Assembly: GCF_001194135.2 (NCBI RefSeq)
Contig: NC_069006.1
Location: 13,714,124 to 13,747,653 of the forward strand
Origin: Octopus bimaculoides
Taxonomy: Eukaryota
Direction: 5' to 3'
DNA: 33,530 bases
Shown: positions 1 to 30,267 of the stretch, in pieces
Layout: every line of letters starts with the position of its first letter
Position numbering within the stretch: the stretch's first letter is position 1
The notes under the pieces: generated by a model
What the model was told of the DNA's origin: nothing
What the model saw: the letters and a program-made list of their open reading frames with translations, nothing else
Databases searched by the model: none
Translations under genes and position numbers: made by a program

Positions 1-873
1 ATTTCAATCATTAAACAAAACTTCAGAAGTTTTTTTTTTTCTTTTTTATTTTCAGAAATAGGTATCCTTTTTTTTCTTCTAAAAAGCTGTAATTATAATA
101 AATCCTTCAACGAAACCCCAGATATTAGGATTCAGAATATACATATTTATAGTGAGTGAATGGTAGAATTGTGGCATTTTGTTACGACTCTTCATGTTCT
201 AAGTTCAAATCCTGCCCAGGTCACTTTGTCTTACATCAGTCGTGGGCAACCTTTTATTTTATTTTTTTTTTTTTTCCCAGAAGTGGGGCCACATGAGACA
301 TGGTTTATTAGGTGGGCTGCAAGAACAAGGTCATTTTACTTAGGTGTGCTGTTCAGAAAGTCTTGAAGATTGCAGTTTGCCTATGACTTGATGGTTGAAA
401 AATTTACATGTTTATTTATCATATATGATGCGTGGATACCAGAGAAAAGAAGGGTTGAAATTAACAAAAGCCGACAAATGTATGTGTGAGTGTGGGATAG
501 AATATACTCAATTAGAATCGCACCCCTCAGTAGATTACTGGTTCTTTATTTTATCAACACTGCTAAAGTCAACCTCAACAGGTTTCAAACTCAAAAGTTA
601 AAAAAGTCCTAATTTAATACCACAAGGCATTTTGTCCACTGCTCCAACAATTCTACCAACACACCATTCTTCATAAATATAAATTAAATGATAATTAACA
701 GTTTATAATTAACTATTCTTCATTGTTTTCACCATTTTTTATCAGTCGTAGAATCTGAAGATGAAATAGAAATCCACATGTCAGATATTTTGCCACTTGG
801 TACCAGCTTTGGTTTCTTATAAAAGAAACCTGTTACTGTTCTAAATAGATTTTGGTGGAATGGTGCTGATGTT

Positions 874-974
874 TTATGCCACTTGCCATTTCTGGAAGAA
901 GTCATTCCCTTTGTTGTCAACAACGATGAAAGCAGGAAAATTTTCTACTTCGACTTTCCAGATAGCTTCCATGC
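874..974 (-). CDS. Class I fumarase exon 12 (stop)
   Basis: tctcag|GC ATG..; [33 protein letters not shown]. Confidence 0.95.
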
Positions 975-3900
975 CTGAGAGGAGAAGATGAGATGATGAA
1001 TAGAGAAATACAGATATTTTTAAGAGTCACAAAAACAGATATTTAAAGATGAGAGAGACAGACAAACAAACAGAAACTGTGATTGTGTGTGTATGCTTGA
1101 ATGTGGGGATACAGTATGTCTTTTAGGTGTCTGGGGGAGAGAGAAATAGAAAAGAGAGATATTTAGTTATTTACAACTGAATTCACTCAGGAAGCTTTGA
1201 TCAGCCTGGGGCTAATATAGAAGGTATTGCCCAAGGCGCCGTGCAGTGGGACTGAACCAGGGCCTATGTGGCTGGGAAGCAAATGTCATACCACACAGCC
1301 ATGCCTGTACTAACTTAATTGGACAGACATACAGGTTAGCAGACTGATAGACACACAAACAAAAAATGGAGGTGGAAGAAGAAAGAGGAATGATGTAGGA
1401 AAGTGGTGGGAACAGACAAGCTGGACTTACCTAATTCTGGGTATTCTAATACTTCGACTTTCTTAATACAGTTCTCAGCCAAGATGGCAGCTGGTCCTCC
1501 AATGGAACCAAGGTAGAAGCCACCATGTTGTTTACAGGATCTGGTTACCTGACAGGAGAGAAGAAAAAGGGAAGAAGTTAAAAATGATAGTGGGGAGTGA
1601 TTGAGAGAGAGAGAGTATCATTATAAATAAAGAGGGAGGGGGGTTGATGTGGGGATGGTAATGAGATAGCTACCTGACAGAGATGAGAGCGATGGAAAGG
1701 AATGATATGAAATAGAGAGAGTGTATCATTATATATGGAGAGAGGGAAGTTAATGTGGGTGGAGCAGTGAGATGGTCATCTGACAGGAGGCGGAGAGAGA
1801 TTGAGAGAGTATTATTATATATAAATAGAGAGGGAGGGAGGTTGATAGGGGCAGGGCAATAAGATGTTAACCTGAGAAGAGAGTGATTGAGAGAGAGAGA
1901 GAGAGAGAGAATCATTGCATATATGAAAATACAACGCATACAAAAGTACACATATTCACTTACATTCACCAACTTATACACACACATGCATACAGACAAA
2001 TACACATATGGACTGACCTGTTTGCTTCTGTTTCCTTTAGCTAACATCACCATACTTCCGCCATTTGACTGTAACAGATCGACATAAGAATCCATACGTC
2101 CAGCAGTTGTAGGGCCGAAAGATCCACTGGCGTAACCCTGATGAGATAAAGTACAATACATGGGTACAGAATTTACAACAAATACAAAACAAACAATTTC
2201 ATCATCATCATTGCTGCCACCAGCACCAGCATCGTCAAAGTAGTGAGACTATGGATTTGGTTCCCGCAATGAAGAGGGAACCAGGCTGCTGGAGTTCTGC
2301 GATGCAAATGATCTTATGGTTTGCAATATTAACTTCAGAAAACCTGCCAGTCACCTAGACACCTACCGTTCTGGCAGACACACTAGCCAAATTGACTACA
2401 TCCTCGCCAGGAAAAGGGAAAGATGGCTGCTTATAAATGCCAAAACCTTCCCAGGCGAAGAATGTATCCCACAACATAGACTAGTAGTAAGCGACTTCAG
2501 GATCAGGGCTAAATGGATGCCCGGAAGATGACCGGAATGGAGGAGAAGGATCTGGAAGCTTAAAGATCCTGTGAATGGACAGATTTAGAGACGTATTAGT
2601 CAAATCCTTTGACGAAATAGAAGGGGATATAGCATCACATGATGTGGAAGACAACTGGAGGTTTCTATGGGACAACCTGCTGAGGGCCACTGACCAGATC
2701 TGTGAATGGTGCAAAGTCCCTTCTCGACCCAAGGTAACGTGAAAGGTGCTTTTTATGTGCCACTGACATGGGTGGCAGCTGCGTGACACCGGTATCTGCC
2801 ATGACTACGATTTCACTTGGCTTGATGGGTCTTCTACTCAAGCATGGCATAACGCCAGAAAGAAAAAAATCGAAGAAAAAAGACTAAAGGAAAAAAAAAG
2901 AGGTTACAAAGGTGTGCTTTTCACCTCAGGGGTTTTGGCAGGTCCTGCATAATAGACAGGATGGTCTCTCATATACTGGGGGAGGCCTTCTCCGCTGTCA
3001 ATTCTCTCCTTTAACTTGGCATGAGCAATATCTCTGGCAACAATCAGCGTTCCGCTGAGAGACAGTCTAGTCTTGATAGGGTAAGAATCCAGGACTGAAA
3101 GCATATCCTTCATTGGTTGGTTCATGTCAATCTAATTAAGAAAAATTAAAACTATTAGAACTAATTATTGTTTTTTTTTTTTTAATGAAATGTGAAAAAA
3201 CAGAATGAAACTAAATTGATAATATAAATGATTATGGTGGTAGTGATGGTGATGATGATAGCCAACTCCCCTTCCATCTAGCATTTTAAAATAGTATATA
3301 AAAACTAATACCCCATCAGTTAAGAGGATGAGTGTGCCCCAGTTGATCCAATCAATGGAACAGCCTGCTCATGAAATTAAAATGCAAGTGGCTGAGTACC
3401 CCACAGACATGCATACTCTTAATGTAGTTCTCAGGGAGATTTAGCATGACAGAATGTGACAAGGCTGGTGCTTTTGAAACACATGTAATACTCATTTTTG
3501 CCAGCTGAGTGGACTGGAGCAAGGACACAATGTGCCACCAGGAATTGAACTGATGACCTTGTGATTGTGAAATGAGTACCCTAACCACTAAACCATGTAC
3601 CTTCACCCATAGTATTCAATAAACAAAGTGAAGTAACAAAAACTCAAAGGAAATCACACACACATACATATGTCGTCGTCACCACCACCACCACTGCTAC
3701 CATCGTCATCATCATCATCAAACATCTGTTTTCCATGCTGTCATGAGTTGGACAGTTTGACCAAAGCTGGCAAGCTACACTAGATTCCAGTCTGATTTCA
3801 CTTGGTTTCTATGGTTGGATGCCCTTCCCAAACACCAACCACTTTACAGTGTGTGCTAGGTGCATTTAACATGGTACCGTCACATCCTCTTCACTAGGAG

Positions 3901-6900
3901 AAGTGGCCTTAACGCTTCTGCTATGGAGGACAGGTCTTCTTGAGTACAGCCAGGGGCTATCTCAGTCATTTGTCATCTCGTCTGACAGTTTCATACATTA
4001 CACACAAAGACAAACACACACATAACACACCTGTACTACATCTCCGCCCAAACTTAAATCAGTGACCTCAGGTAGGTATTTGTGTGGGTTGGTTTCCAGT
4101 TGTTCCAGAAAGATTCCATCTTCGTTGATCCGTGCATTAACCTTGGAAAAATCGAAATAGATAAATAGATAAATAAATAAACACAAATTTTAGTAAATTC
4201 TTTCAGTTAATTACTCAATTAATCAACAAGAAGCAGACATCAAAGATCCATAGAACAAAGAGATAATAATTATTTCTTTATTGCCCACAGAGGGCTAAAA
4301 CATGGAAGGGACAAACAAGAAGACAAGGGGATTAAGTCAATTACATCTGCTTACTTGTCTGTCAGCAGAACAAGAAACACCAATGCCTACAGGACAGGAG
4401 GCTCCGTGGCGGGGTAACCGAATAACCCTCACGTCATGACAGAAGTACTTGCCGCCAAACTGTGCCCCAATGCCCATCTGTTGCGTTAACTTGTGCAGTT
4501 CTTTCTCTAGTTCAACATCACGAAATGCACGGCCAAATTCATTACCTGCAGAAGATAAAAATGAGATGATGATAATAATAATAATCATCATCATCGTTTA
4601 ACGTCCACTTTCCATGCTAGCATGGGTTGGACGATTTGACTGAGGACTGGTGAACCAGATGGCTACACCAGGCTCCAATCTGATTTGGCAGAGTTTCTAC
4701 AGCTGGATGCCCTTCCTAACGCCAACCACTCAGAGTGTTGTTAAATAATAATAATAAATACCAGGTAGTGGCTCTCATGGCTGCTGATCTTAATTGATTT
4801 GAAGTTAAGATGATGATGATGATGATGATGACAATGAGAGATAATGATTATGAGAGGTGATGATGATGATGAAGAAAGAGATGATGATGAGAGAAGTGAT
4901 GATAGAGATGATGATGGTGAGAGGGATGACAATGATAATCGTCACTATCATTGTCATCTTCACCATAATTATCATAGTGATGACACTGATGGTGGTTATG
5001 GTGATGACAATCATCTTGATGATGATTATGATAATGATGACAATGATAATGGCGATGATCATCATCACTATGATAGTGACAGATAGCAATTATGACCATG
5101 ATGATGAGGATGATAGTGATGATCATTATTGTCATCATGATGACGGCAGTAGTGATGCTGATGAAGAGGAGGATATTGATGATGAGGATGATGACGACAA
5201 CGCAGCCAATGACAACAATGATGAAGGTCTTGATTATGATAAAAATGATGATGATGACGACACTGTTCATGACAATGATGACGACGATGCTGATTGTGAT
5301 GGTCACAAAAGAAGGCATCCAGAGTACCAACCTGATGTATGTAGTGTATCTAAATACCGACAGGATGCCAGCTTCACGGTCTTCAGATTATACTCGGCAG
5401 ATGTCCCACCAATGACAACAGCTAAATGGTACGGAGGGCAGGCAGCAGTGCCAAGGGTCTTTGAAAAATAAAAATAGACACTATAAAAATATTACAAAAA
5501 AAAAAAAAAGACGAAACCAACAAGATTGTCTTAAAAATATCGCAACATCTGGTTAAAGATGAGTCATGGTGTCAATGTGTTAATCCTGTAGCATTTAAAT
5601 GACCATATCCGGCCAAAATATTCTGCCCGTTTTATCATCAAACCAGCAAGATATAACCTCTCACATCTACTCTACAATATGGTTCTAAAAATAAACAATC
5701 AGTAGTTCTTGAAGTTTGCATTTTTCACTCCACCTTACTGTACAAAGATGTTACACATGTTATGATTCATTATTTGGCATGTTCTCAGCACAAGAAAATA
5801 TTAGCAGCACATAACATGTACCATGTCTATTAAATAATATTCATCTCTCACTAGATGGAGTACTTTTTTTGTTAATCTTACCATCACAGAACGGTACGTT
5901 ATATACACACACACATACGACGGGTTCCTTTGGATTCTGCCTATCTATTCTGCTAAATATTTCATAAACAAAATATTGTAAGATAACAAATTTTACCTTA
6001 ATCTTTTCGTCAAAGAATTGGAGAAGTTTTTCAGGATTAAGGAGGGCTTTGGTTTGTTGGAAAAGAAATGTCTTGTTGGCAGAACCACCACCTTTAGCTA
6101 AGAAGAGAAAGTCATAATGATTGCTGTTGGTGGAATAGATTTCAATCTGAGCAGGTAGGTTGGTACCAGTGTTGACTTCTTTGTACATGTCTAATGGCGC
6201 CACCTGGAAGTATACAAAGAAATAATAACAACAATGATAATGATAATAATAATATTCCTTTCTACTATAGGTTCAAGGCTTGAAGTTTTGGGCAGGAGAG
6301 TAGTCATCATCATAATCATTATCATCATCGTTTAACGTCCGCTTTCCATGCTAGCATGGGTTGGACGATTTGACTGAGGACTGGTGAAACCAGATGGCTA
6401 CACCAGGCCCCAATCTGATCTGGCAAGGTTTCTACAGCTGGATGCCCTTCCTAACGCCAACCACNNNNNNNNNNNNNNNNNNNNNNNNNNNNNNNNNNNN
6501 NNNNNNNNNNNNNNNNNNNNNNNNNNNNNNNNNNNNNNNNNNNNNNNNNNNNNNNNNNNNNNNNNNNNNNNNNNNNNNNNNNNNNNNNNNNNNNNNNNNN
6601 NNNNNNNNNNNNNNNNNNNNNNNNNNNNNNNNNNNNNNNNNNNNNNNNNNNNNNNNNNNNNNNNNNNNNNNNNNNNNNNNNNNNNNNNNNNNNNNNNNNN
6701 NNNNNNNNNNNNNNNNNNNNNNNNNNNNNNNNNNNNNNNNNNNNNNNNNNNNNNNNNNNNNNNNNNNNNNNNNNACTTCATCCGGTTCCCCAGTTGTCCA
6801 CACATATTGTCCTTTCTTGCCTAAATAGGAGAAGCAAAAACAAAAAAAAATAAATAAGGAAAACATGCATATCGTAAATTGTTCCGTGTGAAAGCATTGT

Positions 6901-9900
6901 AGTAAGAAGCTTGTTTTCCAACCACACGGTTCCAGGTTGTATGTATGTATGAATGGTAAAAAGCTTGCTTTCCAACCACATGGCTCTGGGTTCAGTCCCA
7001 CTGTGTGGCACATTGGGGAAGTGTCTTCTACTATAGCCTCAGGTTGACCGAAACCTTGGGAGTGGATTTGGTGGATGGAAACTGAAAAATGCCCATCATG
7101 TGTGTGTGTGTGTGTGTGAGTTTTTGTGTCTGTATTTGTTGTCCCCCTCACCCACCACCACCACCACTTGACAACTGTTGTTGTTGTTGTTGTTAGTGTG
7201 TTTATGTCCTTGTAACTTATCGTTTCAGCAAAAGAGACCGATAGAATAAGTTGCCAATGCTGCTGGACTGGCTCCTGTGCAGGTGGCATGTAAAAAACAC
7301 CATTTGGACGTGGCCATTGCCAGTACCGCCTGACCGGCCCTCGTGCCGGTGGCACGTAAAAGCAGCCACTACACTCTCGGAGTGGTTGGCGTTAGGAAGA
7401 GCAACCCATGCCAGCATGGAAAGCGGATGTTAAATGACACTGACGATATATGATGCATCTCATATTGGCACTTACCCATACAGATAGCCGTTCCTGTATC
7501 CTGACAGCCTGGCAGTACCATATTGGCAGCAATGTTGGCATTCTTTAGCAACTCCAGGGCTACAAATTTGTCGTTTTTCGAAGCTTCTGGATCCTTGAGA
7601 ATATTTGATAATTGCTGAAAAATTAGACAAAAAGAGACCAATAAATACGTAATACATATGCACAAACCATACATTTCCACATACATATATACATATATGA
7701 GAAGCTTACTTTCAAAACTGGTATAAGTGCATATTTGGTTGATTTCATGATAACTCTTAAAACACAACCTGAAAGCTGCTGGCTTCCTGCACGCGAAATT
7801 CTTTTGAGTCAAACTGGGATAGATGCCATATAGAGATTAGGTAAATCTTTAGACTTTCAATCAAAATCAGATATATTGAAGTTGTTGTTTTAAACAATCA
7901 CTCGAAAGTCATTCTGATGCATATATCCGATTTTGAAAGTAAGTTCATATGTATGTATATGTGTGTGTGTGTATTTACAAACACACACACACACATATGA
8001 TGGTGGTGATGATGATGACGACAAACACACATATGTATATACTTACATATATATGTATACAGGGCACCACCTTGGAGGATTTTAGTTGAATGAATTGAAC
8101 CCCAGCACTGTTTTTTATTAAGTCAGGTACTTCTTATTCTATCTGTCAGTATAACTGGCTTTGAAGTCAGGTACTTATTCTGTCTCTATAACTGGTTTTG
8201 AAAGTAAGTTCATATGTATGTGTGTGTATATACATACACACACATACATACATCACATACAAGCATACATACAAACATACATACATTGTGCATTGTCTCC
8301 TTGAGCAAGAACACTTTATTTCCTATAGTAAAGATTGTTTGCCAACATAACATGGCAGTCCCGGTCTAGGACGAATGTTGCTGTAATTTAGCCCCAGCAG
8401 ACATTGTCTCCAGCTGGCTATATGACACGATCTGTATCCTTACATTTTCGAACGACCACCACACTTGAATGGTGCTTTTTTATTTCTGTATTTCTTGTTG
8501 CACCAGTTTATTCAGCTGGCAAAAGTGAGTTGTACCAGTAATTCATAAGGGTCATGCTGAATCTCTCTAAGAACTATAGTAAAGCTACATGTGTCTGCAC
8601 TTGCACATTAATTCCACGACCAGGCTGTTCCGTTGATTGGATATCAACTACAACACTCATTCCAATTCACTATTTTGCTTGTGTGAACCTCAAAAATCTG
8701 ATAAGGACCCTGGTTGAAATCTACTACAGTAGAAAAAATAAAAGAACAAGAGACTGTAAGAATAGTTACCTGTAGATGACCTGGCCTCAGTAGGTGTTCA
8801 ATGTCCACGATGGCCTTCTCTGCCAAAAGAGTCAGTGCTTGTGAATCAATTTGCAGCACCTTCTTACCATTGACGTTGACTGTTTCTACATAATCACCTG
8901 TACAGGTGAGAGTGGAAAAAAACAGGAATATAATGACCTGGTCACACCATGCCAGCATGGAAAGCAGACATGTCTAGTTAAAAAAGAAGCTATATCCAAC
9001 TACTTCGAACAAAGTCTGAGAGTAAATAAAAAATATTCAATCCATAAATGTCAGTCCAACAAAATATATATTTGGTAGTTTCTTATTTCTTTACTGCCCA
9101 CAAGGGGCTACACACAGAGGGGACAAACAAGGACAGACAAACGGATTAAGTTGATTATATCAACCCCAATGCGTAACTAGTTTTAAGGGTATCGTGTACC
9201 GTCCACCAAATCCACTCACAAGGCTTTGGTCGGCCCGAAGCTATAGTAGAAGACACTTGCACAAGGTGCCATGCAGTGGGGACTGAACCCAGAACCATGT
9301 GGTTGGTAAGCAAGCTACTTACTACACAGCCACTCCTGGTCAGTCACAAAGACTACCGCATAAACTTGCACTTATGTTTAGTGGCTTGCTGTATTCTTTT
9401 TCAGTTCAATCTACCATTCCTTTTTACCCATAACCAAAATGAGCTCTTTTCCGTTCTCTCAATACATATGAAAACATGAAGAAGCACCAAAATCTTTTAA
9501 GTGCTTAGGGCCTCTATCGGTCTTAATCTAGCCTAGTATCCAGGGGTTGACGATGATGATGATTAACATTCATAAATATCACATTCATTTAAGTCCAGGA
9601 TGACCTAATGAGTTGGATAAAATAAACACTAGAGAAAGTACTGAGGTCAATAGAATTAATAACTAAACCCCTCCTTGAAGACAGTGCTCCAGCATGGTCA
9701 GCGCCCAAAGAATGAAATTGGTAAAAGAAATACAAAGATAAAATGCTACAAACCTGAAATTTTCTTCCATGGAATCTCTGGTTTTGATTCAAAGTCCATT
9801 ATGTCTTGGAAGATGAAGGGTTTTGCAGTGGCAGCTTTTGCCAATGTCCGTTTTAAGTGTAGAAAGTGGCGGGCGGCAACAGATCTTCGGCCAAAGTGTG

Positions 9901-9925
9901 ATAGCCATCGGGAACAGCACAACAT
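874..9925 (-). CDS. fumA: Class I (Fe-S) fumarate hydratase, FumA/FumB-type, single chain, probably mitochondrial; 12 coding exons, about 573 aa predicted
   Basis: GT-AG exons join in phase: 9925-9754, 8897-8770, 7614-7476, 6820-(gap), 6203-5997, 5458-5332, 4545-4355, 4141-4031, 3131-2925, 2137-2018, 1548-1431, 974-874. Family motifs: [127 protein letters not shown]. The symbol is the bacterial family name. Confidence 0.95.
1185..1310 (-). mobile_element. tRNA-derived SINE family B
   Basis: GCCCAAGG.GCC..GCAGTGGGACTGAACC..ACCACACAGCC, the reverse complement of the SINE head. Confidence 0.75.
1431..1548 (-). CDS. Class I fumarase exon 11
   Basis: tgtcag|..G|gtaagt; [39 protein letters not shown]. 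Confidence 0.95.
2018..2137 (-). CDS. Class I fumarase exon 10
   Basis: catcag|..CAG|gtcagt; [40 protein letters not shown]. Confidence 0.95.
2247..2742 (+). mobile_element. RTE-clade LINE fragment (end of AP endonuclease plus linker), inactive, in the fumarase exon 9-10 intron
   Basis: [55 protein letters not shown], followed by a frameshifted WKLKD..EDNWRFL segment ending in a stop. Confidence 0.85.
2925..3131 (-). CDS. Class I fumarase exon 9
   Basis: aattag|..GAG|gtgaaa; [41 protein letters not shown]. Confidence 0.95.
3700..3870 (-). mobile_element. Diverged SINE family A copy
   Basis: TTTTCCATGCTGTCATGAGTTGGACAG..GGATGCCCTTCCCAAACACCAACCAC. Confidence 0.7.
4031..4141 (-). CDS. Class I fumarase exon 8
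   Basis: tccaag|..CAG|gtgtgt; [37 protein letters not shown]. Confidence 0.93.
4355..4545 (-). CDS. Class I fumarase exon 7 (third cluster Cys)
   Basis: ctgcag|..CAA|gtaagc; [50 protein letters not shown]. Confidence 0.95.
4585..4738 (-). mobile_element. SINE family A ((GAT)n tail)
   Basis: (CAT)n-CGTTTAACGTCC.CTTTCCATGCTAGCATGGGTTGGACG..GATGCCCTTCCTAACGCCAACCAC; near-identical copies at 6322, 14400 and 30566. Confidence 0.85.
4800..5300. repeat. Degenerate (GAT)n trinucleotide tract
   Basis: About 500 bp of GAT/GAC/CAT variants in the fumarase exon 6-7 intron. Confidence 0.9.
5332..5458 (-). CDS. Class I fumarase exon 6 (second cluster Cys)
   Basis: tcaaag|..G|gttggt; [42 protein letters not shown] (absent from the ORF track). 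Confidence 0.95.
5997..6203 (-). CDS. Class I fumarase exon 5
   Basis: ttccag|..AAG|gtaaaa; [57 protein letters not shown]. Confidence 0.95.
6322..6464 (-). mobile_element. SINE family A copy, cut by gap
   Basis: Near-identical to 4585-4738. Confidence 0.85.
6775..6820 (-). CDS. Class I fumarase exon 4, visible part (rest in gap 6465-6774)
   Basis: atttag|GC AAG AAA GGA..; [15 protein letters not shown], phase 1 matches exon 3. Confidence 0.85.
6890..7255 (+). mobile_element. tRNA-derived SINE family B (duplicated head)
   Basis: TGGTAAAAAGCTTGC (A-box-like) ..GGGTTCAGTCCC (B-box-like) ..GGGGAAGTGTCTTCTACTATAGC, internal (TG)n; the head is partly repeated at 6895-6940. Confidence 0.8.
7255..7440 (+). 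mobile_element. SINE family A copy with internal deletion
   Basis: GGAGTGGTTGGCGTTAGGAAG joined directly to ACCCATGCCAGCATGGAAAGCGGATGTTAAATGA. Confidence 0.7.
7476..7614 (-). CDS. Class I fumarase exon 3 (first cluster Cys)
   Basis: tttcag|..G|gtaagt; [46 protein letters not shown]. Confidence 0.95.
8770..8897 (-). CDS. Class I fumarase exon 2
   Basis: tacag|GT..CAG|gtaact; [43 protein letters not shown]. Confidence 0.92.
9190..9335 (-). mobile_element. tRNA-derived SINE family B
   Basis: CTATAGTAGAAGACACTTGC..GGGACTGAACCCAGAACCATGTGGTTGG..ACACAGCC. Confidence 0.8.
9754..9925 (-). CDS. Class I fumarase coding exon 1 (start codon and presequence)
   Basis: ttttag|ATG...TCA G|gtttgt; [57 protein letters not shown]; phase 1 joins exon 2. 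Confidence 0.85.
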
Positions 9926-9927
9926 CT

Positions 9928-10140
9928 AAAGAGAGAGAGTGAGAGAGTGAAACAGATAGATAGATAGATAGACAGACAGACATGACAGAGAGATAGATAG
10001 ATAGACAGACAAAAGGAGATAGATAATAGATAGATAGATAGATGGATACACAAAAGGATAAATAGATAGATAGATAGATGGATAGACAGAGGGACAGATA
10101 AATAATTTAGATAGACAGACAGAAGAACAGATAGATAGAT
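9928..10140. repeat. (GA)n/(GATA)n/(GACA)n microsatellite just upstream of the fumarase ATG exon
   Basis: Direct sequence. Confidence 0.9.
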
Positions 10141-12418
10141 ATGTTTCTTTATTGGCAATAGGGCTGAACAGAGAGGGGACAAAATACAAAGTAGAGCTTT
10201 TCTTTTTGGGAAGAGAAGAAAAAAGGGTGTAGAATTTCGATCAAAAAGGATCATGGAAGGGGGGGGGGCACGTGCGTCAGTATATATGTTGTGAGTGCTC
10301 ACCAGTTTTCTTTCTTTCTTTTTTTTTTTTTAACATTAGATTCCGATAGAATCGTAATCTATACTATCTGAAAGGTATTTGTAGAACATTTCAATAAAAA
10401 AAATATTCATTTTTGTTAAAGTTATGAGGAAACAAAGTCAGAGGGTGGTGGCACTTGTGAAAGTATGTCGAGATTCTTTGCATCGTAATTATATTACAAT
10501 CTAAAATATAAATTATGTAAACAAACAAAACGAACGGATGAAATATTCCTTAAAAAAAAAAAATCAATTATTACTTTTCTTAATCGTCTTTTACAATGTA
10601 ATACGACTAGAAATATTCAACCTTAAATACCAAGATGACCTTTAGGAGGTTTTTCACCTGGGTGGTTGATTAACAGATAAGTAGACACAGTTAACTCTCT
10701 TTCTCTCTATCACAGAGTTTAATGGCATACCCTCTCACTCTGTGGTGCATGCATTAGTGTAATGTAATAGTCGTAATAGTTATTACACAATACTTGCAGG
10801 TAACAACTCTATATACATAATAATATTACATAATAATTCCATTAATATCTTGAATGCCTTTCACAGGATTATAGGTTACCATATTCATTAGATCCCCTCC
10901 TTCTTCTCTCCACTACTCGGAATAACTCCCAAGACGGCCAAATTGCCCTCGAATTACAGCCACATCGACTTAAGAAAAAAATATTGCATTAATAAAATGT
11001 AATCCTAGATATACCCCAAATAAGGCAGGACAGTCGTAACTGGAAATGCTTTTGATCATAAACAGGCCTGCATGACCAGAGTTGACCTGGGGCTAAATAC
11101 TATCGCCATCTCCAACAACAACAGTGACCCTTCGATTGCCAGTGTCTGCATCAAAGGTCGCACCACGTCCTTAGTTCAAGAGTTTGCAGATTCTGCTTGA
11201 CTTACACTTTGCCTTTGTTGTTTTTTAAAGATTTTTGCGGACAGATAGAAAAAAAAAACAAGAATAAACAAATAATAACAAATAAACATCACTTGCCTTC
11301 TTAATGTGTGTACTGGAAGTAGGCCGTCCACGACTTGAAACCCAAATCACGCAGTTCCCTGCTGAGTTGTGGTGAGAGGAAACATGTGGAGGATAAGCAC
11401 TAAATAATAAGATTTATCTGCAGAGGCAAATTTTTCTACCACTACACCAAGAGATTAAATTTACGAATTGNNNNNNNNNNNNNNNNNNNNNNNNNNNNNN
11501 NNNNNNNNNNNNNNNNNNNNNNNNNNNNNNNNNNNNNNNNNNNNNNNNNNNNNNNNNNNNNNNNNNNNNNNNNNNNNNNNNNNNNNNNNNNNNNNNNNNN
11601 NNNNNNNNNNNNNNNNNNNNNNNNNNNNNNNNNNNNNNNNNNNNNNNNNNNNNNNNNNNNNNNNNNNNNNNNNNNNNNNNNNNNNNNNNNNNNNNNNNNN
11701 NNNNNNNNNNNNNNNNNNNNNNNNNNNNNNNNNNNNNNNNNNNNNNNNNNNNNNNNNNNNNNNNNNNNNNNNNNNNNNNNNNNNNNNNNNNNNNNNNNNN
11801 NNNNNNNNNNNNNNNNNNNNNNNNNNNNNNNNNNNNNNNNNNNNNNNNNNNNNNNNNNNNNNNNNNNNNNNNNNNNNNNNNNNNNNNNNNNNNNNNNNNN
11901 NNNNNNNNNNNNNNNNNNNNNNNNNNNNNNNNNNNNNNNNNNNNNNNNNNNNNNNNNNNNNNNNNNNNNNNNNNNNNNNNNNNNNNNNNNNNNNNNNNNN
12001 NNNNNNNNNNNNNNNNNNNNNNNNNNNNNNNNNNNNNNNNNNNNNNNNNNNNNNNNNNNNNNNNNNNNNNNNNNNNNNNNNNNNNNNNNNNNNNNNNNNN
12101 NNNNNNNNNNNNNNNNNNNNNNNNNNNNNNNNNNNNNNNNNNNNNNNNNNNNNNNNNNNNNNNNNNNNNNNNNNNNNNNNNNNNNNNNNNNNNNNNNNNN
12201 NNNNNNNNNNNNNNNNNNNNNNNNNNNNNNNNNNNNNNNNNNNNNNNNNNNNNNNNNNNNNNNNNNNNNNNNNNNGTTTCTCCGTCTTTATTATTTACGT
12301 GGTCCAGATCGACTTTGCCTTTCATCCTTTCTTGGTCGATAAATTAAGTACCAGTTACGTACTGTGGGTCGATGTAATCGACTCGTCCCCCTCCCCCGTT
12401 CGCCAGAGCGCATTTTTT

Positions 12419-13286: not shown

Positions 13287-14399
13287 AGATTATACTTTAC
13301 ACTTCTATATTTAACTGTACGTGTACATTATTTTTGCTTCTGGTGTCTTCTGCCTTTCTAATATAAACGTTTATCTGGGAATTTACTTAAAGTGAGAAAA
13401 AGATCGTATGCAACAAATAAGTCGTCTTAACATATTTCGTAAAGACTTCCTCCCCCCCATTTTCTCGCAAATTATTGTTGTTTTAAAAATTTTTTGGGNN
13501 NNNNNNNNNNNNNNNNNNNNNNNNNNNNNNNNNNNNNNNNNNNNNNNNNNNNNNNNNNNNNNNNNNNNNNNNNNNNNNNNNNNNNNNNNNNNNNNNNNNN
13601 NNNNNNNNNNNNNNNNNNNNNNNNNNNNNNNNNNNNNNNNNNNNNNNNNNNNNNNNNNNNNNNNNNNNNNNNNNNNNNNNNNNNNNNNNNNNNNNNNNNN
13701 NNNNNNNNNNNNNNNNNNNNNNNNNNNNNNNNNNNNNNNNNNNNNNNNNNNNNNNNNNNNNNNNNNNNNNNNNNNNNNNNNNNNNNNNNNNNNNNNNNNN
13801 NNNNNNNNNNNNNNNNNNNNNNNNNNNNNNNNNNNNNNNNNNNNNNNNNNNNNNNNNNNNNNNNNNNNNNNNNNNNNNNNNNNNNNNNNNNNNNNNNNNN
13901 NNNNNNNNNNNNNNNNNNNNNNNNNNNNNNNNNNNNNNNNNNNNNNNNNNNNNNNNNNNNNNNNNNNNNNNNNNNNNNNNNNNNNNNNNNNNNNNNNNNN
14001 NNNNNNNNNNNNNNNNNNNNNNNNNNNNNNNNNNNNNNNNNNNNNNNNNNNNNNNNNNNNNNNNNNNNNNNNNNNNNNNNNNNNNNNNNNNNNNNNNNNN
14101 NNNNNNNNNNNNNNNNNNNNNNNNNNNNNNNNNNNNNNNNNNNNNNNNNNNNNNNNNNNNNNNNNNNNNNNNNNNNNNNNNNNNNNNNNNNNNNNNNNNN
14201 NNNNNNNNNNNNNNNNNNNNNNNNNNNNNNNNNNNNNNNNNNNNNNNNNNNNNNNNNNNNNNNNNNNNNNNNNNNNNNNNNNNNNNNNNNNNNNNNNNNN
14301 NNNNNNNNNNNNNNNNNNNNNNNNNNNNNNNNNNNNNNNNNNNNNNNNNNNNNNNNNNNNNNNNNNNNNNNNNNNNNNNNNNNNNNNNNNNNNNNNNNN

Positions 14400-14620
14400 A
14401 CACCATTTCGAGCGTGGCCGTTTTCGTGCGGGTGACACGTAAAAGCACCCACTACACTCTCTGAGTGGTTGGCGTTAGGAAGGGCATCCAGCTGTAGAAA
14501 CTCTGCCAAATTAGACTGGAGCCTGGTGTTGCCATCCGGTTTCACCAGTCCTCAGTCAAATCGTCCAACCCATGCCAGCATGGAAAGCGGACGTTAAACG
14601 ATGATGATGATGATGATGAT
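14400..14620 (+). mobile_element. SINE family A copy
   Basis: Reverse complement of the 4585 copy, ends in (GAT)n. Confidence 0.85.
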
Positions 14621-15944: not shown

Positions 15945-16065
15945 AAAAACTTAATGTAAAATTTATTGACCGCACAAAAGACAGTGGTTTGCCAAGTGCT
16001 GAGGAACTGAAGCTTGTCAAAGCTGTCCAAGACAAAAATAAAGAATTGCTACGAATTCCTCGAAG
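15945..16065 (+). CDS. LSG1: LSG1 exon (first visible)
   Basis: ggcag|AA..AG|gtttgt; EKLNVKFIDRTKDSGLPSAEELKLVKAVQDKNKELLRIPR. Confidence 0.88.
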
Positions 16066-16333
16066 GTTTGTTTGTATTGATTGATTTTATGTCACATTTG
16101 GTAAACTATAACATTGTTGATTGCAGATTTTCATTAGGCGAATGAAAAGCTTATTGCCTTCCTGGTGGTGAGAGAGAAACAAGGGAGTGTTTGCTGCACA
16201 TTGGCAAACAAATATCACAAAAGACTTTTCTGAAAGAGCCCCAACTTATTGCTATTCTTGCCAGTGTTTATATCCTTTGCTGAAATATATAAACATGTAC
16301 ACATAGAGCTATACACGCACACACATATGTGTA

Positions 16334-16391
<58 letters not shown>

Positions 16392-19300
16392 CATGTGTAA
16401 ATTTATTCATTTAAAATTTTTATTTTTTAATCCTCACTTTGTCTTTCTCTGTATTCTTTCTCTGCAGGCCTCACTGGGATTCCAACACAACACCTGAAGA
16501 ACTTGCTGCCAAGGAACGAGAACTCTTTCTTCTGTGGAGGAAGAGTTTGTCTTTGTAAGTATTTATCTGTATTTTATAAATATTGTTGCTATTTCTCTTT
16601 ACCTTACTTTGTTGACCCTTTTGTTATTATATTTCTGTTGGAATAAACTGCTGTTCTTTTAGTTACTTTTGAATTTATTGAAGAATTGAGTAAACTAACT
16701 TAGGCATTATTAATCCTTTAACATTAAAAACTGGCCATATCTGGCCAAAATATTTTCCCTGTTTTATGTTCAAACTGGTCAGATGTGGCCTTTCACATCT
16801 AGGCCAGTGGAGTCAGAGTCGTGGAGTTGGAAACAATTAATGGGTAGCTGGAGTCGGAGTCTGTAAAACTATACCAACTCCAACATCTCTATTCTTTAAT
16901 ATAAACCATATATAGGCCTACTCAAAGAACAAGCGTATGCATATGCTTTATGAGATATACAGACCACCACAGTCACTTAATTACATAAAAAGGAGTTAGA
17001 GGTGCCACTAGTAGATGAGTCAGAGTTGAAGTCTTTTGTTTTGACTTCATAGCCCTGCTCACATCATTCTAAAAAACCTACAATATCATTCTAAAAATGT
17101 TGAAGTTACCTCTTCAAAATTCCAAAGCTACAAGATAATTCATGATCGATTCAAAACAATGTTTCCAACTCCACGACTCTTGACTCCACTGGCCTGGATG
17201 TGAAAGGCAAATAATGTGTTGCCTTTATTGAACCCATAAAGCAAAATATGCCAAATATGCCCCTTTGTCACTTCTGTTATAGCTGTGAACAAATAACTGT
17301 TAAAATCAAACTGCACTCTTCAAAACATTCACTAAGAATAAGTACAAGGTAAAATTACTACCTGCAATTACTATAGCAAGTTGATGCAGGTAGCTTATCC
17401 TGTCACCCTCCAACTTTTAGTTCATGCAATTGTAAAAACTGCATTATTTACGGGATGACCCAATATATTTATGTTTCCAAAAGGTTACAAGCAGAAGACC
17501 ATGTTACATTGACTCCATACGAAAAGAACCTGGACTTCTGGAGACAACTTTGGCGCGTTCTTGAACGAAGGTAAGTTTTCTATTTATTTACAGATTTTTG
17601 TTGTTAATGATGTTGTTTAGCCCTAGGCCAACCCTGATCCTACAGGCCTGTAATCAAAGACATTCCCACCATGACAATCCTGTGTGCAGCAGATCTAGGA
17701 CCCTTTGACGGGTTTTTTACCACTCAACTGTCATCCTTCATATGCTTCACATGTTAATACTAGCCTAGTCTTACAGTTCTATATTTAAGAGATGAGGAAT
17801 CCTGTACATTATTTACATTTGACGGATATTTGTCCTCATCTTGTTTGTTGTAAACACAATGTTTCAGCTGATATACCCTCCAGCCTTCTTCAGGTGTCTT
17901 GGGGGAAATTTCGAACCTGGGTTCTCATTCCTAAGGTATTCTTTGATGTTGTTATTATTATTGTTCAGGTCACTGCTTCGAATTGAACTCGGAATCTTGG
18001 GGTTAGTAGCACACAGAGAGAAACACACACACACACGCACACGCACACACACACANNNNNNNNNNNNNNNNNNNNNNNNNNNNNNNNNNNNNNNNNNNNN
18101 NNNNNNNNNNNNNNNNNNNNNNNNNNNNNNNNNNNNNNNNNNNNNNNNNNNNNNNNNNNNNNNNNNNNNNNNNNNNNNNNNNNNNNNNNNNNNNNNNNNN
18201 NNNNNNNNNNNNNNNNNNNNNNNNNNNNNNNNNNNNNNNNNNNNNNNNNNNNNNNNNNNNNNNNNNNNNNNNNNNNNNNNNNNNNNNNNNNNNNNNNNNN
18301 NNNNNNNNNNNNNNNNNNNNNNNNNNNNNNNNNNNNNNNNNNNNNNNNNNNNNNNNNNNNNNNNNNNNNNNNNNNNNNNNNNNNNNNNNNNNNNNNNNNN
18401 NNNNNNNNNNNNNNNNNNNNNNNNNNNNNNNNNNNNNNNNNNNNNNNNNNNNNNNNNNNNNNNNNNNNNNNNNNNNNNNNNNNNNNNNNNNNNNNNNNNN
18501 NNNNNNNNNNNNNNNNNNNNNNNNNNNNNNNNNNNNNNNNNNNNNNNNNNNNNNNNNNNNNNNNNNNNNNNNNNNNNNNNNNNNNNNNNNNNNNNNNNNN
18601 NNNNNNNNNNNNNNNNNNNNNNNNNNNNNNNNNNNNNNNNNNNNNNNNNNNNNNNNNNNNNNNNNNNNNNNNNNNNNNNNNNNNNNNNNNNNNNNNNNNN
18701 NNNNNNNNNNNNNNNNNNNNNNNNNNNNNNNNNNNNNNNNNNNNNNNNNNNNNNNNNNNNNNNNNNNNNNNNNNNNNNNNNNNNNNNNNNNNNNNNNNNN
18801 NNNNNNNNNNNNNNNNNNNNNNNNNNNNNNNNNNNNNNNNNNNNNNNNNNNNNNNNNNNNNNNNNNNNNNNNNNNNNNNNNNNNNNNNNNNNNNNNNNNN
18901 NNNNNNNNNNNNNNNNNNNNNNNNAAAAACGTTTCAGCATTTTTAGCTGCTATTTCTGAACTTCGGTATGTGGTGAAGCAACCTGTTGCTGATCCCTTAA
19001 TTTTGTTTATAAATGTTAAAGAACTTTTAAATAAGTTCCACACCGATAATGGTGCTTACATACCGAAGGGCTTGGTAAAAATTATTAATTATTAATTTAT
19101 TAATAAATTGATAATCCTTTACCCTTTTAATTGTAATAATATATATATATATATGTATATATAATGTGTGTATGTGTAATCTGATGTTTCTCTCTTCTTT
19201 TTCTCAATGCAGGCAATATTGGGCCAAGTACTTCTCCACTGAAGGTGTCCGGGTTGCATTTTGGTCAGCCATAGAAGAAACTAAGAAACATCAACAGGTA

Positions 19301-25300: not shown

Positions 25301-25627
25301 CCATGCTGTGGCACTGCCTTGAAAAGTTTTAGTCGAACGAATGCCCCCCCCCCACCCCAGTATTTGTTATTTTTTTCTAAACCTGGAACCCAGGTGGAGG
25401 CTTAACATTAGATAAAGGGGCCCAGGTCTGACATGGTTAAGGAACCATATAATGGCTGGCTCTCTCATTATTTATGTAGTAGTCGCAGTAGTAATTGCTG
25501 TAGTAATAGTTGTAGTAGTAGCTGCAGTACTAATAGTTGTAGTAGTAGTAGTAGGTGACAGTGTTGTTTTAAGTTTTCTGTAGAAAGCTTTGCTTACTAT
25601 GTCTCTTTGTATTTATATTTTTTCCAG

Positions 25628-25667
<40 letters not shown>

Positions 25668-26212
25668 TTTTTTTTTATTTTTTAATTTCATTAATATACC
25701 TTCTGGTCTTTGACAGGGAAAGCTGTTGTACTGTCATCCCCCTCCTGGGGTCTTAGCTGAAAATTTCAGCGATACTCTGAAGACATCTTCCAAAAAATCG
25801 AAGAAAGAAACTTCTGAAAACTCCCAGGTAATATTTGGGTAATTTATGAAATGTGTTTAATTCAAATTCTTCTGCCACCCTGGGTATGGAGGAGAAGGAG
25901 GAGGTTTGAGGCTGGAAGGGAGATGTTAACTAAAGTTGAGGTTGTGTCATTGAAGATGTTTATTATCCTCCATCTTCCCTCATTGTTTTGTTTCCCTTCT
26001 GGTCCTTTCACAATGTAACCTCGTGGACATCGGTGGCGATTTTTTTTCTTCCTCCGTTTTTCCCTTCTTTGGACTTTCTTTGTTTCCGACAAAGAGCTCC
26101 ACTCGAAACGTCATATTCTCTTTCTTTCCTTTCCCAAGCGTCCAGTAACACAATATCTATATCACGTCCTCACGTTGTTGTTTTTTTGTCTTTTTCCTTT
26201 TTTGAACTTATG

Positions 26213-26248
<36 letters not shown>

Positions 26249-29057: not shown

Positions 29058-30267
29058 CTTTTTGTTGTTGTTGTTGGTGTTGTAGCGTTCGTTTTATTTT
29101 CGAATAGGAATTAATAAAAACAAAAATGAAAACAGAAAAGAAAAGAATATAAATATATAGATTAAATATTTTCTTTAAAATCTCTCTCTCTCTCTCTCTC
29201 TCTCTTGCACACACACACATAGTAAATCCCCAAAAAGAAAAAACGAACAAACACAAGAAAAAACAAAATAACAACGTCAGGACATGGAACATGCAAAGTG
29301 TTAGCAGAAGCCCAGGGAAGGAAAGAAAGATGGTTTTATGTTTCAAGCAAGGCTCTTCTTCAGGAACAGGAGCCAGAGGAAAGTCCAATAGAAAAGGAAG
29401 ATGGAGGAAAAAAAAAAACCGCCAACGATTCACATGTGGTTACATTTTGAAATGACCGGATGGGAATGGGTGAAGGAAAAGTTCTATGTAAGAGAAGGAG
29501 GTATGTGTGTGTGTGTGGGTATGTGCATGCGCGCTAGTGTGTGTTGTGTGTGGTGTTGGCTGTTTATATGTGTATGTGTGAGTAAATTTTGTGCCTCTTA
29601 ATGTTGTAGGAAGAATTCAGCAGCATGGTAACAGGAGTGGTGGTCGTTTGTGTGGTTGTGTGTCTCTTCACATGTGCGTAGAGGAATGGTCAGTAGAAAG
29701 GTGTTTGACTGGCAGTTTGAAGTATGTGTGTGCGTGTATGTATGTGTAGGGTCGTTTTTTTTTTGTTGGTCAGTTATTTTTAGTGTTTTGACAGAAAAAA
29801 GTCATTCTAAAATTGTTTTTTAATGTAAGCGTGCCCAAACAAGTCGAATGCTTACACAGAGCAGGCTTTACAGCCACATCATTCAAACTGACCGGGTGAA
29901 ACCGGGCTTAGCTGCTAGTATATCTATCTTTTCATTTGTCTTGCTTACGTTCTGGCATTTGCTGAATTTTCTTGAGAACAATTTTTTCTTAGTGGTCAGA
30001 CCATATGGTGGGGGTGGGGGTCTACATTTAGCATATTAGATGTCCACCTAGTGGTCATCCCTCTTATATGAATGTAATATAATTTTTCTGAATCATCAGA
30101 TTTTCTTCAATATGCTAGGCCACTGGTTTAAATTGATAATAATCAAATGAATATCAATTTTTACCCTTATTATTTATATATATATATAAACCAGTGAATG
30201 TATTTCACTGAAATAGTATATCCTTACGAGAGTGAGACAGACTTCTTCATCTAGCCAGTCGTGCTAC

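What the first reader, a model, noticed from the sequence alone, without database searches (positions are those of the whole stretch)
874..9925. Intron-rich class I (4Fe-4S) fumarate hydratase in an animal genome
Seen: 12 in-phase spliceosomal exons encode a full FumA/FumB-type enzyme. The cluster cysteines lie in CQDTG (C137), GTAAC and GVSCSADR, and the second-to-third spacing is exactly C-X93-C. Established: vertebrates, yeast and plants use class II fumarase (FumC/FH). Class I is typical of bacteria, archaea, trypanosomatids and apicomplexans, and to my knowledge has also been reported in the flatworm Schistosoma. Inference: this apparently molluscan host keeps an oxygen-labile Fe-S fumarase, possibly beside class II and possibly tied to hypoxia or malate dismutation. 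Eleven canonical introns full of host SINEs argue against contamination or recent transfer.
Basis: partly seen in the sequence, partly recalled or inferred. Interest (0 to 1): 0.72.

Follow-up and report, generated by a model that had tools for sequence, protein, structure and literature searches.

The report
Octopus iron-sulfur fumarase gene, already annotated
This is the genuine, already annotated Octopus bimaculoides nuclear gene for an iron-sulfur (class I) fumarase, an enzyme many invertebrate phyla keep; what is new here is that an assembly gap in exon 4 makes the public protein model 20 residues too short.

Summary
On the minus strand, 12 coding exons (9925 down to 874) encode a fused two-domain class I fumarate hydratase. 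The cluster cysteines are C137, C257 and C351, with C-X93-C between the last two, and 12 of 13 mapped cluster and active-site positions can be read and are conserved. It is a host gene, not contamination. It has GT-AG introns carrying the same SINEs as the neighbouring LSG1 gene, and it is syntenic with Octopus sinensis. All 11 intron positions are shared with cuttlefish and oyster, 10 with amphioxus and 5 with Trichoplax. dN/dS is 0.11, and the animal sequences form one clade.

The novelty does not hold. [quoted passage not shown] A 2017 paper already catalogued class I FH in multicellular eukaryotes.

What this check adds:
- The gap hides 58 nt of exon 4, and the deposited model splices at the GT next to the gap, losing 20 residues including the Arg173-equivalent.
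- 33 of those 58 nt sit displaced in intron 3, probably an assembly artefact.
- An upstream 5'-UTR exon with a GC donor extends the gene to about 11366.

The parts
11297..11366 (-). Non-coding 5'-UTR exon. Its 5' end is uncertain. It ends ...TTAAGAAG and is followed by a GC donor (GCAAGT at 11296-11291).
   Evidence: Octopod transcript L003 nt 1-69 align here at 81%. The sequence was read.
9926..11296 (-). 5'-UTR intron of GC-AG type. Its acceptor is tttag|ATG. It contains a (GATA)n microsatellite.
   Evidence: and the sequence. Inferred from a congener transcript, not from O. bimaculoides RNA.
9754..9925 (-). Coding exon 1 (172 nt). It carries the ATG and a basic, acid-free N-terminal extension that looks like a mitochondrial presequence.
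8770..8897 (-). Coding exon 2 (128 nt).
   Evidence: O. sinensis, cuttlefish and oyster have the same exon length.
7476..7614 (-). Coding exon 3 (139 nt). It holds the CQDTG motif: C137 (codon 7504-7506), Q138 and D139.
6775..6820 (-). Visible first 46 nt of coding exon 4 ([15 protein letters not shown] + GT). The last two letters, GT (6776-6775), are the start of a Val codon, but the deposited gene model used them as a splice donor.
6465..6774 (.). Assembly gap. It should hold the last 58 nt of exon 4, the intron-4 donor and roughly 300 nt of intron 4.
6869..6902 (-). Displaced copy of 33-34 nt of the hidden part of exon 4. It encodes [11 protein letters not shown], and the Arg codon CGA at 6872-6874 is the equivalent of LmFH Arg173. 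It lies inside intron 3, where O. sinensis has 15 nt of SINE tail.
   Evidence: Its differences from the congener transcript within those 11 codons are all synonymous.
5997..6203 (-). Coding exon 5 (207 nt). It holds the KGGGSANK motif (G221).
5332..5458 (-). Coding exon 6 (127 nt). It holds GTAAC, with C257 at codon 5438-5440.
4355..4545 (-). Coding exon 7 (191 nt). It holds H339 and GVSCSADR, with C351 at codon 4370-4372.
4031..4141 (-). Coding exon 8 (111 nt), the linker between the N- and C-terminal domains.
2925..3131 (-). Coding exon 9 (207 nt), the start of the Fumerase_C domain. It holds R426.
2018..2137 (-). Coding exon 10 (120 nt). It holds GPTTAGRMD (T472, T473, R476) and K496.
1431..1548 (-). 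Coding exon 11 (118 nt).
546..974 (-). Last exon. The coding part is 974-874 (stop TAA at 876-874). The 3' UTR runs to at least 611 by transcript homology, and there is an AATAAA at 551-546.

Best explanation
WHAT IT IS. The region is the Octopus bimaculoides nuclear gene for a single-polypeptide class I (FumA/FumB/LmFH-type) fumarate hydratase. It is the orthologue of O. sinensis XP_029651698.1 and is the locus behind UniProt A0A0L8IA73.

SHOWN.
- It has 12 coding exons plus one 5'-UTR exon.
- Both family domains are full length.
- All three [4Fe-4S] ligands are present: C137, C257 and C351.
- Every readable catalytic or substrate residue known from the Leishmania enzyme is present: Q138, D139, G221, H339, R426, T472, T473, R476 and K496.
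- The gene is under purifying selection.
- Its intron positions date back at least to the placozoan-bilaterian ancestor.

INFERRED MECHANISM (from the Leishmania and Methanocaldococcus enzymes). The three cysteines hold a cubane cluster. The fourth, non-cysteinyl iron binds the C2 hydroxyl or carboxylate of S-malate as a Lewis acid. T472, with R426 and R476, acts as the base at C3. D139, with H339, protonates the leaving hydroxyl. The result is reversible interconversion of malate and fumarate.

INFERRED LOCALISATION. The roughly 33-residue N-terminal extension has 7 Lys/Arg and no Asp/Glu. Similar extensions occur in all animal orthologues examined. This points to import into mitochondria, where Fe-S clusters are made.

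THE APPARENT DEFECT. The gap at 6465-6774 swallows the last 58 nt of exon 4. The public 554-aa model bridges the gap by using the GT next to it as a donor. It therefore lacks 20 residues (V + [19 protein letters not shown] in congeners), including the substrate-binding Arg. I read this as an assembly problem, not biology. The 33-nt exon-4 fragment at 6902-6869 is most likely a local assembly or gap-closure error.
For: IDENTITY.
- Pfam PF05681 plus PF05683, both full length.
- NCBIfam class I FH models score 727-833 bits, and TIGR00723 passes its cut-off.
- PDB 5l2r scores E=3e-221.
- Residue mapping: 12 of 12 visible cluster and catalytic residues are identical. The residue list comes from bioRxiv 10.1101/2022.09.03.506457.

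SAME LOCUS AS THE PUBLIC MODEL.
- P0001 equals the visible exons exactly.

HOST GENE.
- Ten visible GT-AG introns.
- An octopod transcript (L003) aligns exon by exon with borders at the predicted junctions.
- O. sinensis, cuttlefish and oyster have the same exon lengths.
- Intron position and phase are shared 11/11 with those three, 10/11 with amphioxus and 5/11 with Trichoplax.
- The neighbour is LSG1, as in O. sinensis.
- The same SINE families occur inside and outside the gene.
- Animals are monophyletic in a neighbour-joining (NJ) distance tree, bootstrap 0.915, against the 30 closest prokaryotic sequences and Leishmania.
- dN/dS is 0.11 over 554 codons against O. sinensis.

GAP.
- The required phase (1 mod 3) matches the 58 nt predicted from the 104-nt O. 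sinensis exon 4.
- 62 of 65 homologues have a spacing of 54 and two (including the octopod P0002) have 55, while only the deposited model has 35.

ARTEFACT READING.
- O. sinensis has no such insert.
- A 90-nt perfect duplication flanks another gap in the same window, so gap edges in this scaffold are unreliable.

PRESEQUENCE.
-.
- Published MitoFates predictions for class I FH in eukaryotes that carry both classes.

PROTEIN-LEVEL EVIDENCE IN A MOLLUSC.
- Biomphalaria hemocyte proteomics detected the orthologue (PMC6281880).
Against: - No O. bimaculoides transcript was available. Splicing is inferred from a congener transcript and from conserved gene structure.
- 25 of the 58 hidden nucleotides, and the intron-4 donor, were never seen, so an in-frame stop or frameshift there cannot be formally excluded.
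- The NCBIfam FumA equivalog cut-off (1105 bits) is not reached (833 bits). That threshold is tuned to enterobacterial FumA, and the query carried about 20 X.
- No animal class I FH was found to have been characterised biochemically in the literature searches run here. Activity, cluster content and oxygen lability are therefore all inferred by homology.
- Mitochondrial targeting rests on composition only.
Confidence: 0.93

Rival explanations
1. Bacterial contamination of the assembly, or a recent horizontal transfer from a bacterium into octopus.
For: Over the C-terminal 393 aa, the closest prokaryotic sequences (mostly Rhodospirillales and other Alphaproteobacteria) are 70-78% identical. That is numerically close to the identity with distant animal phyla.
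Against: - The gene has twelve spliceosomal introns carrying host SINEs.
- Its intron positions are identical in oyster and cuttlefish, and 10 of 11 are shared with amphioxus.
- It is syntenic with O. sinensis beside LSG1.
- No prokaryotic sequence falls inside the animal clade (bootstrap 0.915).
- The window's protein groups with O. sinensis and then cuttlefish, following species relationships.
Confidence: 0.01
2. The O. bimaculoides copy is really broken at exon 4. On this reading the displaced 33-nt fragment reflects a true rearrangement that destroyed the exon, making this a pseudogene or a null allele in the sequenced animal.
For: - Part of exon 4 sits in the wrong place, joined to a SINE tail at a 5-nt microhomology (CTACA). 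A k-mer assembler should not create such a join.
- The rest of the exon was never seen.
Against: - All other exons are intact, with canonical splice sites.
- dN/dS against O. sinensis is 0.11.
- The displaced fragment is open and encodes exactly the residues of its congeners.
- The gap size fits an intact exon plus intron.
- Another gap in the same window shows a clear assembly artefact.
Confidence: 0.04
3. Exon 4 is intact inside the gap, and the 33-nt copy in intron 3 is a real, harmless micro-duplication (a template-switch insertion) rather than an assembly error.
For: - The junction has only short microhomology, typical of replication template switching. Source and target would lie about 110-130 nt apart.
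- A 33-nt insert 48 nt upstream of the acceptor need not disturb splicing.
Against: - It is absent from O. sinensis.
- It sits within about 100 nt of a contig end in an assembly with demonstrable gap-edge artefacts.
- The copy differs from the O. sinensis exon at 1 of 34 positions.
- The true O. bimaculoides exon is unknown, so the age of the copy cannot be judged.
Confidence: 0.25
4. The enzyme's main role in the animal is not the oxidative TCA step. It may run malate to fumarate in anaerobic malate dismutation, or act on other substrates known for class I enzymes (mesaconate, D-tartrate), with class II FH serving the TCA cycle.
For: - Class I FHs also convert tartrate/oxaloacetate and mesaconate/citramalate.
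- Most multicellular eukaryotes with class I are reported to have class II as well.
- Retention in many marine invertebrate phyla suggests a non-redundant role.
Against: - Nothing in the sequence distinguishes direction or substrate, because all fumarase catalytic residues are conserved.
- The carriers include active aerobes such as cephalopods, echinoderms and amphioxus, not only facultative anaerobes.
- In organisms with both classes, class I is the one predicted to be mitochondrial. That fits an ordinary TCA role.
Confidence: 0.2

Closest known systems
UniProt A0A0L8IA73_OCTBM, 'fumarate hydratase', Octopus bimaculoides (P0001)
   Same: It is the same locus. The 554-aa sequence equals the visible exons of this window, residue for residue.
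   Different: The deposited model ends exon 4 at 6777 and treats the GT at 6776-6775, next to the gap, as a donor. It therefore lacks 20 residues that every homologue has, including the Arg173-equivalent. The true product is predicted to be 574 aa.
[quoted passage not shown]
   Same: They are orthologues. The C-terminal 391 aligned positions are 98.2% identical. All 12 coding-exon lengths match, counting the inferred 104-nt exon 4. The upstream neighbour is the same, LSG1.
   Different: O. sinensis exon 4 is contiguous (104 nt) and its intron 3 has no exon-4 insert. Its introns are longer: the CDS spans 25 kb, against about 9 kb here.
Leishmania major FH-2 (PDB 5l2r, 6uqm and others), the structurally characterised class I FH
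   Same: It has the same two-domain single-chain architecture. The alignment scores E=3e-221, with about 67% identity in the C-terminal region. All cluster ligands and catalytic residues are identical.
   Different: It does not group with the animal clade in the distance tree. The octopus protein has its own N-terminal presequence-like extension.
E. coli FumA/FumB (NCBIfam NF011919, NF011920)
   Same: The alignment runs end to end (protein 34-574 against profile 3-540) at 833 bits, with the same domain order.
   Different: The score is below the equivalog cut-off of 1105 bits. The bacterial proteins lack the 33-residue N-terminal extension, and their genes have no introns.
Class II fumarate hydratase (human FH, yeast Fum1, E. 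coli FumC)
   Same: It catalyses the same reaction.
   Different: It is an unrelated fold with no Fe-S cluster. The query matched only the two class I domains in Pfam and nothing else.

Membership tests
Class I fumarate hydratase, single-subunit type (FumA/FumB/LmFH) | N-terminal Fumerase domain (PF05681) and C-terminal Fumerase_C domain (PF05683) on one polypeptide | tested here: met
   Both domains are full length: residues 83-360 (profile 4-269 of 270) and 366-572 (profile 1-205 of 205). E-values are 1e-69 and 5e-85.
Class I fumarate hydratase, single-subunit type (FumA/FumB/LmFH) | Three conserved cysteines that ligate the [4Fe-4S] cluster (LmFH C133, C252, C346) | tested here: met
   C137, C257 and C351 align to them. 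The C2-to-C3 spacing is X93, as in LmFH.
Class I fumarate hydratase, single-subunit type (FumA/FumB/LmFH) | Catalytic acid/base and substrate-binding residues (LmFH Q134, D135, G216, H334, R421, T467, T468, R471, K491) | tested here: met
   All nine are identical in the window's protein.
Class I fumarate hydratase, single-subunit type (FumA/FumB/LmFH) | Substrate-binding Arg equivalent to LmFH Arg173 | tested here: inconclusive
   The position (R178) falls in the 58 nt hidden by the gap. A displaced fragment at 6902-6869 does encode ...NNLRY with this Arg, and O. sinensis has it. The in-place codon cannot be read.
Class I fumarate hydratase, single-subunit type (FumA/FumB/LmFH) | Curated score thresholds of the NCBIfam models | tested here: not met
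   - FumA equivalog NF011919: 833 bits against a cut-off of 1105.
- NF011920: 832 against 1094.
- TIGR00722 (N-terminal domain): 87 against 100.65.
- TIGR00723 (C-terminal domain): passes, 192 against 145.
These thresholds are set for prokaryotic proteins, and the query had about 20 X in the N-terminal domain. This argues against calling it 'FumA' in the strict sense, not against class I membership.
Class I fumarate hydratase, single-subunit type (FumA/FumB/LmFH) | Bound oxygen-labile [4Fe-4S] cluster and fumarate/malate hydro-lyase activity | not testable with these tools
   This needs anaerobic expression, spectroscopy and an activity assay.
Functional spliced nuclear gene of O. bimaculoides | Spliced transcripts from this locus | not tested
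   No O. bimaculoides transcript was retrievable. A congener transcript (L003) matches every exon border, and cuttlefish has an intronless transcript contig, L002.
Class II fumarate hydratase (aspartase/fumarase superfamily) | Lyase_1 and FumaraseC_C domains with the GSSxMPxKxN signature | tested here: not met
   No such Pfam hit was found; only PF05681 and PF05683 match.
L(+)-tartrate dehydratase TtdAB or two-subunit archaeal-type class I FH | Separate alpha and beta subunits, and a score above the equivalog cut-offs | tested here: not met
   The protein is a single fused polypeptide. The TtdA and TtdB models score 54 and 73 bits against cut-offs of 365 and 264.

The most novel reading that the evidence does not exclude
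Class I fumarase would be an ancestral metazoan, mitochondrially targeted enzyme. Its intron positions are shared from Placozoa to cephalochordates. It has been kept for over half a billion years in many marine invertebrate phyla, reportedly alongside class II FH in most multicellular carriers, because it has a non-redundant role, for example at low oxygen, in reverse (fumarate-producing) flux, or on alternative substrates. The lineages that lack it would then have lost it secondarily. The literature searches run here found no animal class I FH that has been characterised biochemically, so this remains open.
Probability: 0.25. Interest if true: 0.45.

Novelty: already known. Interest (0 to 1): 0.1.

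Why it matters
As a discovery it matters little. The gene is annotated in UniProt and RefSeq for this genus and for dozens of invertebrates, and its occurrence in multicellular eukaryotes has been published.

Two practical points follow.
- The public O. bimaculoides protein (A0A0L8IA73) is an artefactually shortened model that lacks an active-site arginine. It should not be used for structural or comparative work; the 574-aa congener sequences should be used instead.
- The conserved intron map (11/11 within molluscs, 10/11 with amphioxus, 5/11 with Trichoplax) is compact evidence that animal class I fumarase was inherited vertically from early metazoans and was not acquired piecemeal.

The physiological reason why so many invertebrates keep an oxygen-sensitive fumarase remains an open, testable question, though a modest one.

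Tried and rejected
- Looking up the deposited protein P0001 on a contig returned nothing on record. No independent O. bimaculoides assembly or transcript could be compared.
- I searched the window for the remaining hidden pieces of exon 4 (the first 20 nt, and the last 14 nt plus donor) allowing up to 4 mismatches. Neither was found.
- I tried to read Table 1 of Jayaraman et al., to see whether octopus and its class II FH are listed. The table is an image in the preprint, no supplements are held, and the journal version is not held.
- Literature searches for octopus plus fumarate hydratase, and for class I fumarase in animals, gave nothing specific.
- I ran no further search on class II FH in octopus. 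Only the best 120 hits are listed, and a vertebrate or bacterial query would not reach the cephalopod entry.
- ARAGORN found no tRNA-like gene, so I do not claim that SINE family B is tRNA-derived.
- The LINE-like ORF in intron 9 matches the endonuclease-reverse-transcriptase family only weakly (E=0.013, below the cut-off).
- An alphaproteobacterial (mitochondrial) origin is suggested by the identity ranking. The distance tree does not resolve the sister group of the animal clade, so I make no claim.
- Structure prediction was not run. 67% identity to a crystal structure makes it unnecessary.

Full report
OBSERVATION

The gene lies on the minus strand. Stop-free segments and splice-site anchoring give 12 coding exons: 9925-9754, 8897-8770, 7614-7476, 6820-6775 (runs into the N-run), 6203-5997, 5458-5332, 4545-4355, 4141-4031, 3131-2925, 2137-2018, 1548-1431 and 974-874. 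All ten fully visible introns are GT...AG.

The conceptual product matches Pfam Fumerase (PF05681) and Fumerase_C (PF05683) over their full lengths. It aligns end to end with the NCBIfam class I FH models at 727-833 bits. It also matches the Leishmania major FH-2 crystal-structure sequences at E=3e-221.

The spacing between the second and third is exactly X93.

THE GAP

The scan's program asked for this to be tested first.

Upstream of the gap the CDS has consumed 485 nt (phase 2). Exon 5 begins in phase 0. The hidden piece must therefore be 1 mod 3.

The orthologous exon 4 of Octopus sinensis is 104 nt. With 46 nt visible here, 58 nt are hidden, and 58 mod 3 is 1. The stated gap of 310 N is compatible with 58 nt of exon plus about 300 nt of missing intron, judged from the 562-nt O. 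sinensis intron 4.

The deposited O. bimaculoides protein (UniProt A0A0L8IA73, 554 aa) is identical to the visible exons. It reads GEPDE|VAPLD. This is possible only if the GT at 6776-6775, which is really the start of a Val codon, was taken as a splice donor next to the gap.

Other octopod sequences have 20 more residues there. In the octopod transcript product P0002 they are V + [19 protein letters not shown], and the O. sinensis and O. vulgaris proteins are also 574 aa. Among 65 homologues with both anchor motifs, 62 have a spacing of 54, two (including P0002) have 55, and only the deposited model has 35.

The missing stretch contains the Arg equivalent to LmFH Arg173. In the two top PDB sequences this position reads A versus R, consistent with one being a point variant there.

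AN UNEXPECTED DISPLACED FRAGMENT

I aligned an octopod transcript contig (L003, a Logan assembly of SRR3401912) to the window. Transcript nt 573-609, which belong to the 'hidden' part of exon 4, match window 6902-6866. That is on the coding strand but upstream of the exon-4 acceptor, inside intron 3.

The fragment encodes [11 protein letters not shown]. Within those 11 codons it differs from the transcript only at synonymous sites (AAT/AAC, CTC/TTA, AGA/CGA). It is therefore genuine O. bimaculoides coding sequence, not a chance match.

At this spot O. sinensis has 15 nt of SINE tail (cacatagctacagct) between '...cttcttac' and 'gcatgttttcc...'. The window has 33 nt of exon 4 instead. The other 25 hidden nucleotides are nowhere in the window.

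I favour a local assembly or gap-closure error. The fragment sits next to a contig end. In addition, the 10-N gap at 31405-31414 in the same window is flanked by a perfect 90-nt duplication, so gap edges in this scaffold are demonstrably unreliable.

A real micro-duplication is not excluded, because the junction has only 5 nt of microhomology. A truly broken exon is unlikely: dN/dS is 0.11 against O. sinensis over 554 codons and all other exons are intact.

EXTENT OF THE GENE

The same transcript shows a non-coding first exon at about 11366-11297. It ends AAG|GCAAGT, which is a GC donor, and it splices to the tttag|ATG acceptor at 9926/9925. The 3' UTR extends to at least 611, with an AATAAA at 551-546.

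The gene therefore spans about 546-11366, has 13 exons, and has 12 introns, one of them GC-AG. These UTR features are inferred from a congener transcript.

HOST GENE, NOT CONTAMINATION

- I mapped exact exon structures in four other genomes plus O. sinensis and projected the introns onto one alignment. All 11 coding-intron positions and phases are shared with O. sinensis, cuttlefish and oyster. Ten are shared with amphioxus and five with Trichoplax.
- The upstream neighbour on the opposite strand is LSG1, a eukaryotic ribosome-biogenesis GTPase. Its exons lie at about 15.95-27.84 kb, and it matches human LSG1 (PDB 6lsr) at E=3e-78.
- The same neighbour sits beside the O. sinensis gene, with 95-97% nucleotide identity in shared exons.
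- Two SINE-like families have seven copies in six FH introns and nine more copies elsewhere in the window, including LSG1 introns.
- The closest prokaryotic sequences (mainly Rhodospirillales) are 70-78% identical. In a bootstrapped neighbour-joining (NJ) distance tree, however, the 25 animal sequences form one clade (support 0.915). That clade excludes all 30 prokaryotes and Leishmania. Within it the window's protein sits next to O. sinensis and then cuttlefish.
- The sister group of the animal clade is unresolved, so I make no claim about ultimate origin.

HOW IT MOST LIKELY WORKS

This is by homology with the Leishmania and Methanocaldococcus enzymes; the residue roles were read.

C137, C257 and C351 would hold a [4Fe-4S] cluster whose unique iron binds the substrate. 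T472, with R426 and R476, would act as the base. D139, with H339, would act as the acid. Q138, G221, T473 and K496 are the aligned equivalents of further substrate-contacting residues. All of these are conserved.

The N-terminal 33 residues precede the start of homology to FumA. They contain 7 Lys/Arg and no Asp/Glu. Twenty-one other animal orthologues have comparable basic N-termini with at most 2 acidic residues. This fits a mitochondrial presequence, in line with published predictions for eukaryotes that carry both FH classes.

Activity, cluster content and localisation are inferred, not shown.

COMPARISON WITH WHAT IS KNOWN

The 120 best database hits include named class I FH from many animal groups:
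- molluscs (cephalopods, bivalves, gastropods, a chiton);
- annelids, nemerteans, a priapulid, rotifers and flatworms;
- echinoderms, hemichordates, three Branchiostoma species and two Trichoplax species.

[quoted passage not shown] O. sinensis and O. vulgaris entries exist.

Jayaraman et al. (bioRxiv 10.1101/158956) catalogued eukaryotes with class I FH. They stated that it occurs in uni- and multicellular eukaryotes, and that most multicellular carriers also have class II. They also noted that class I is often the one predicted to be mitochondrial.

The orthologue has been detected as a protein in Biomphalaria hemocytes (PMC6281880).

VERDICT

This is a real, correctly identified, ordinary host gene that is already known. 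The useful by-products are:
- the diagnosis of the truncated public model;
- the displaced exon fragment;
- the extra UTR exon;
- the cross-phylum intron map.

Interest is low. Whether octopus also has class II FH, and what the enzyme is for, remain untested here.

Noticed in passing
window 15950-27840 (+ strand): Exons of the ribosome-biogenesis GTPase LSG1 (large subunit GTPase 1) lie here, head-to-head with the fumarase gene. Human LSG1 (PDB 6lsr) matches at E=3e-78. O. sinensis has the same arrangement. The first LSG1 exon or exons were not located and may lie in the gaps at 11471-12275 or 13499-14399.
   Followed up: partly
window 31315-31404 and 31417-31506 (either side of the 10-N gap at 31405-31414): A perfect 90-nt duplication flanks this short gap. 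It is an unclosed-overlap assembly artefact, and it shows that gap edges in this scaffold cannot be trusted.
   Followed up: yes
window 2247-2528 (+ strand), inside FH intron 9: A 94-aa open frame resembles the endonuclease domain of a LINE (non-LTR retrotransposon). The Pfam Exo_endo_phos_2 match is only E=0.013, below the cut-off, so this is probably a decayed fragment.
   Followed up: partly
window 4600-4745, 6334-6464, 14456-14595, 30590-30721 (family A); 9195-9345, 6956-7078, 24915-25220 and others (family B): Two SINE-like repeat families have 16 copies or fragments across the window, inside FH introns, in LSG1 introns and in intergenic DNA. Many copies also occur in the O. sinensis locus. 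ARAGORN reports no tRNA-like structure in them.
   Followed up: partly
window 4800-5300 (FH intron 6): A long GAT/GAC-rich low-complexity tract produces spurious stop-free frames of up to 179 aa on the minus strand (poly-His/Asp/Ile-like). It is not coding.
   Followed up: no
window 9950-10140: A (GATA)n-type microsatellite lies immediately upstream of the ATG exon, within the 5'-UTR intron.
   Followed up: no
window 25992-26192 versus 29255-29466: A diverged inverted repeat (70% identity over 212 nt) flanks the last LSG1 exon. It is probably two copies of a dispersed element.
   Followed up: partly
L008 (MAG contig JANQKO010000471.1, 4.5 kb) and L009 (2.6 kb): The two 'alphaproteobacterial' MAG contigs most similar to the animal enzyme (75-78%) are very short. 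Their binning, and so their taxonomic label, is uncertain. They were not used for any conclusion.
   Followed up: no
whole window: Eight N-runs totalling about 3.7 kb lie in 33.5 kb (6465-6774, 11471-12275, 13499-14399, 18056-18924, 21060-21173, 26620-27016, 31405-31414, 32781-33114). This is a fragmented short-read scaffold, so gene models here need checking against congeners.
   Followed up: yes
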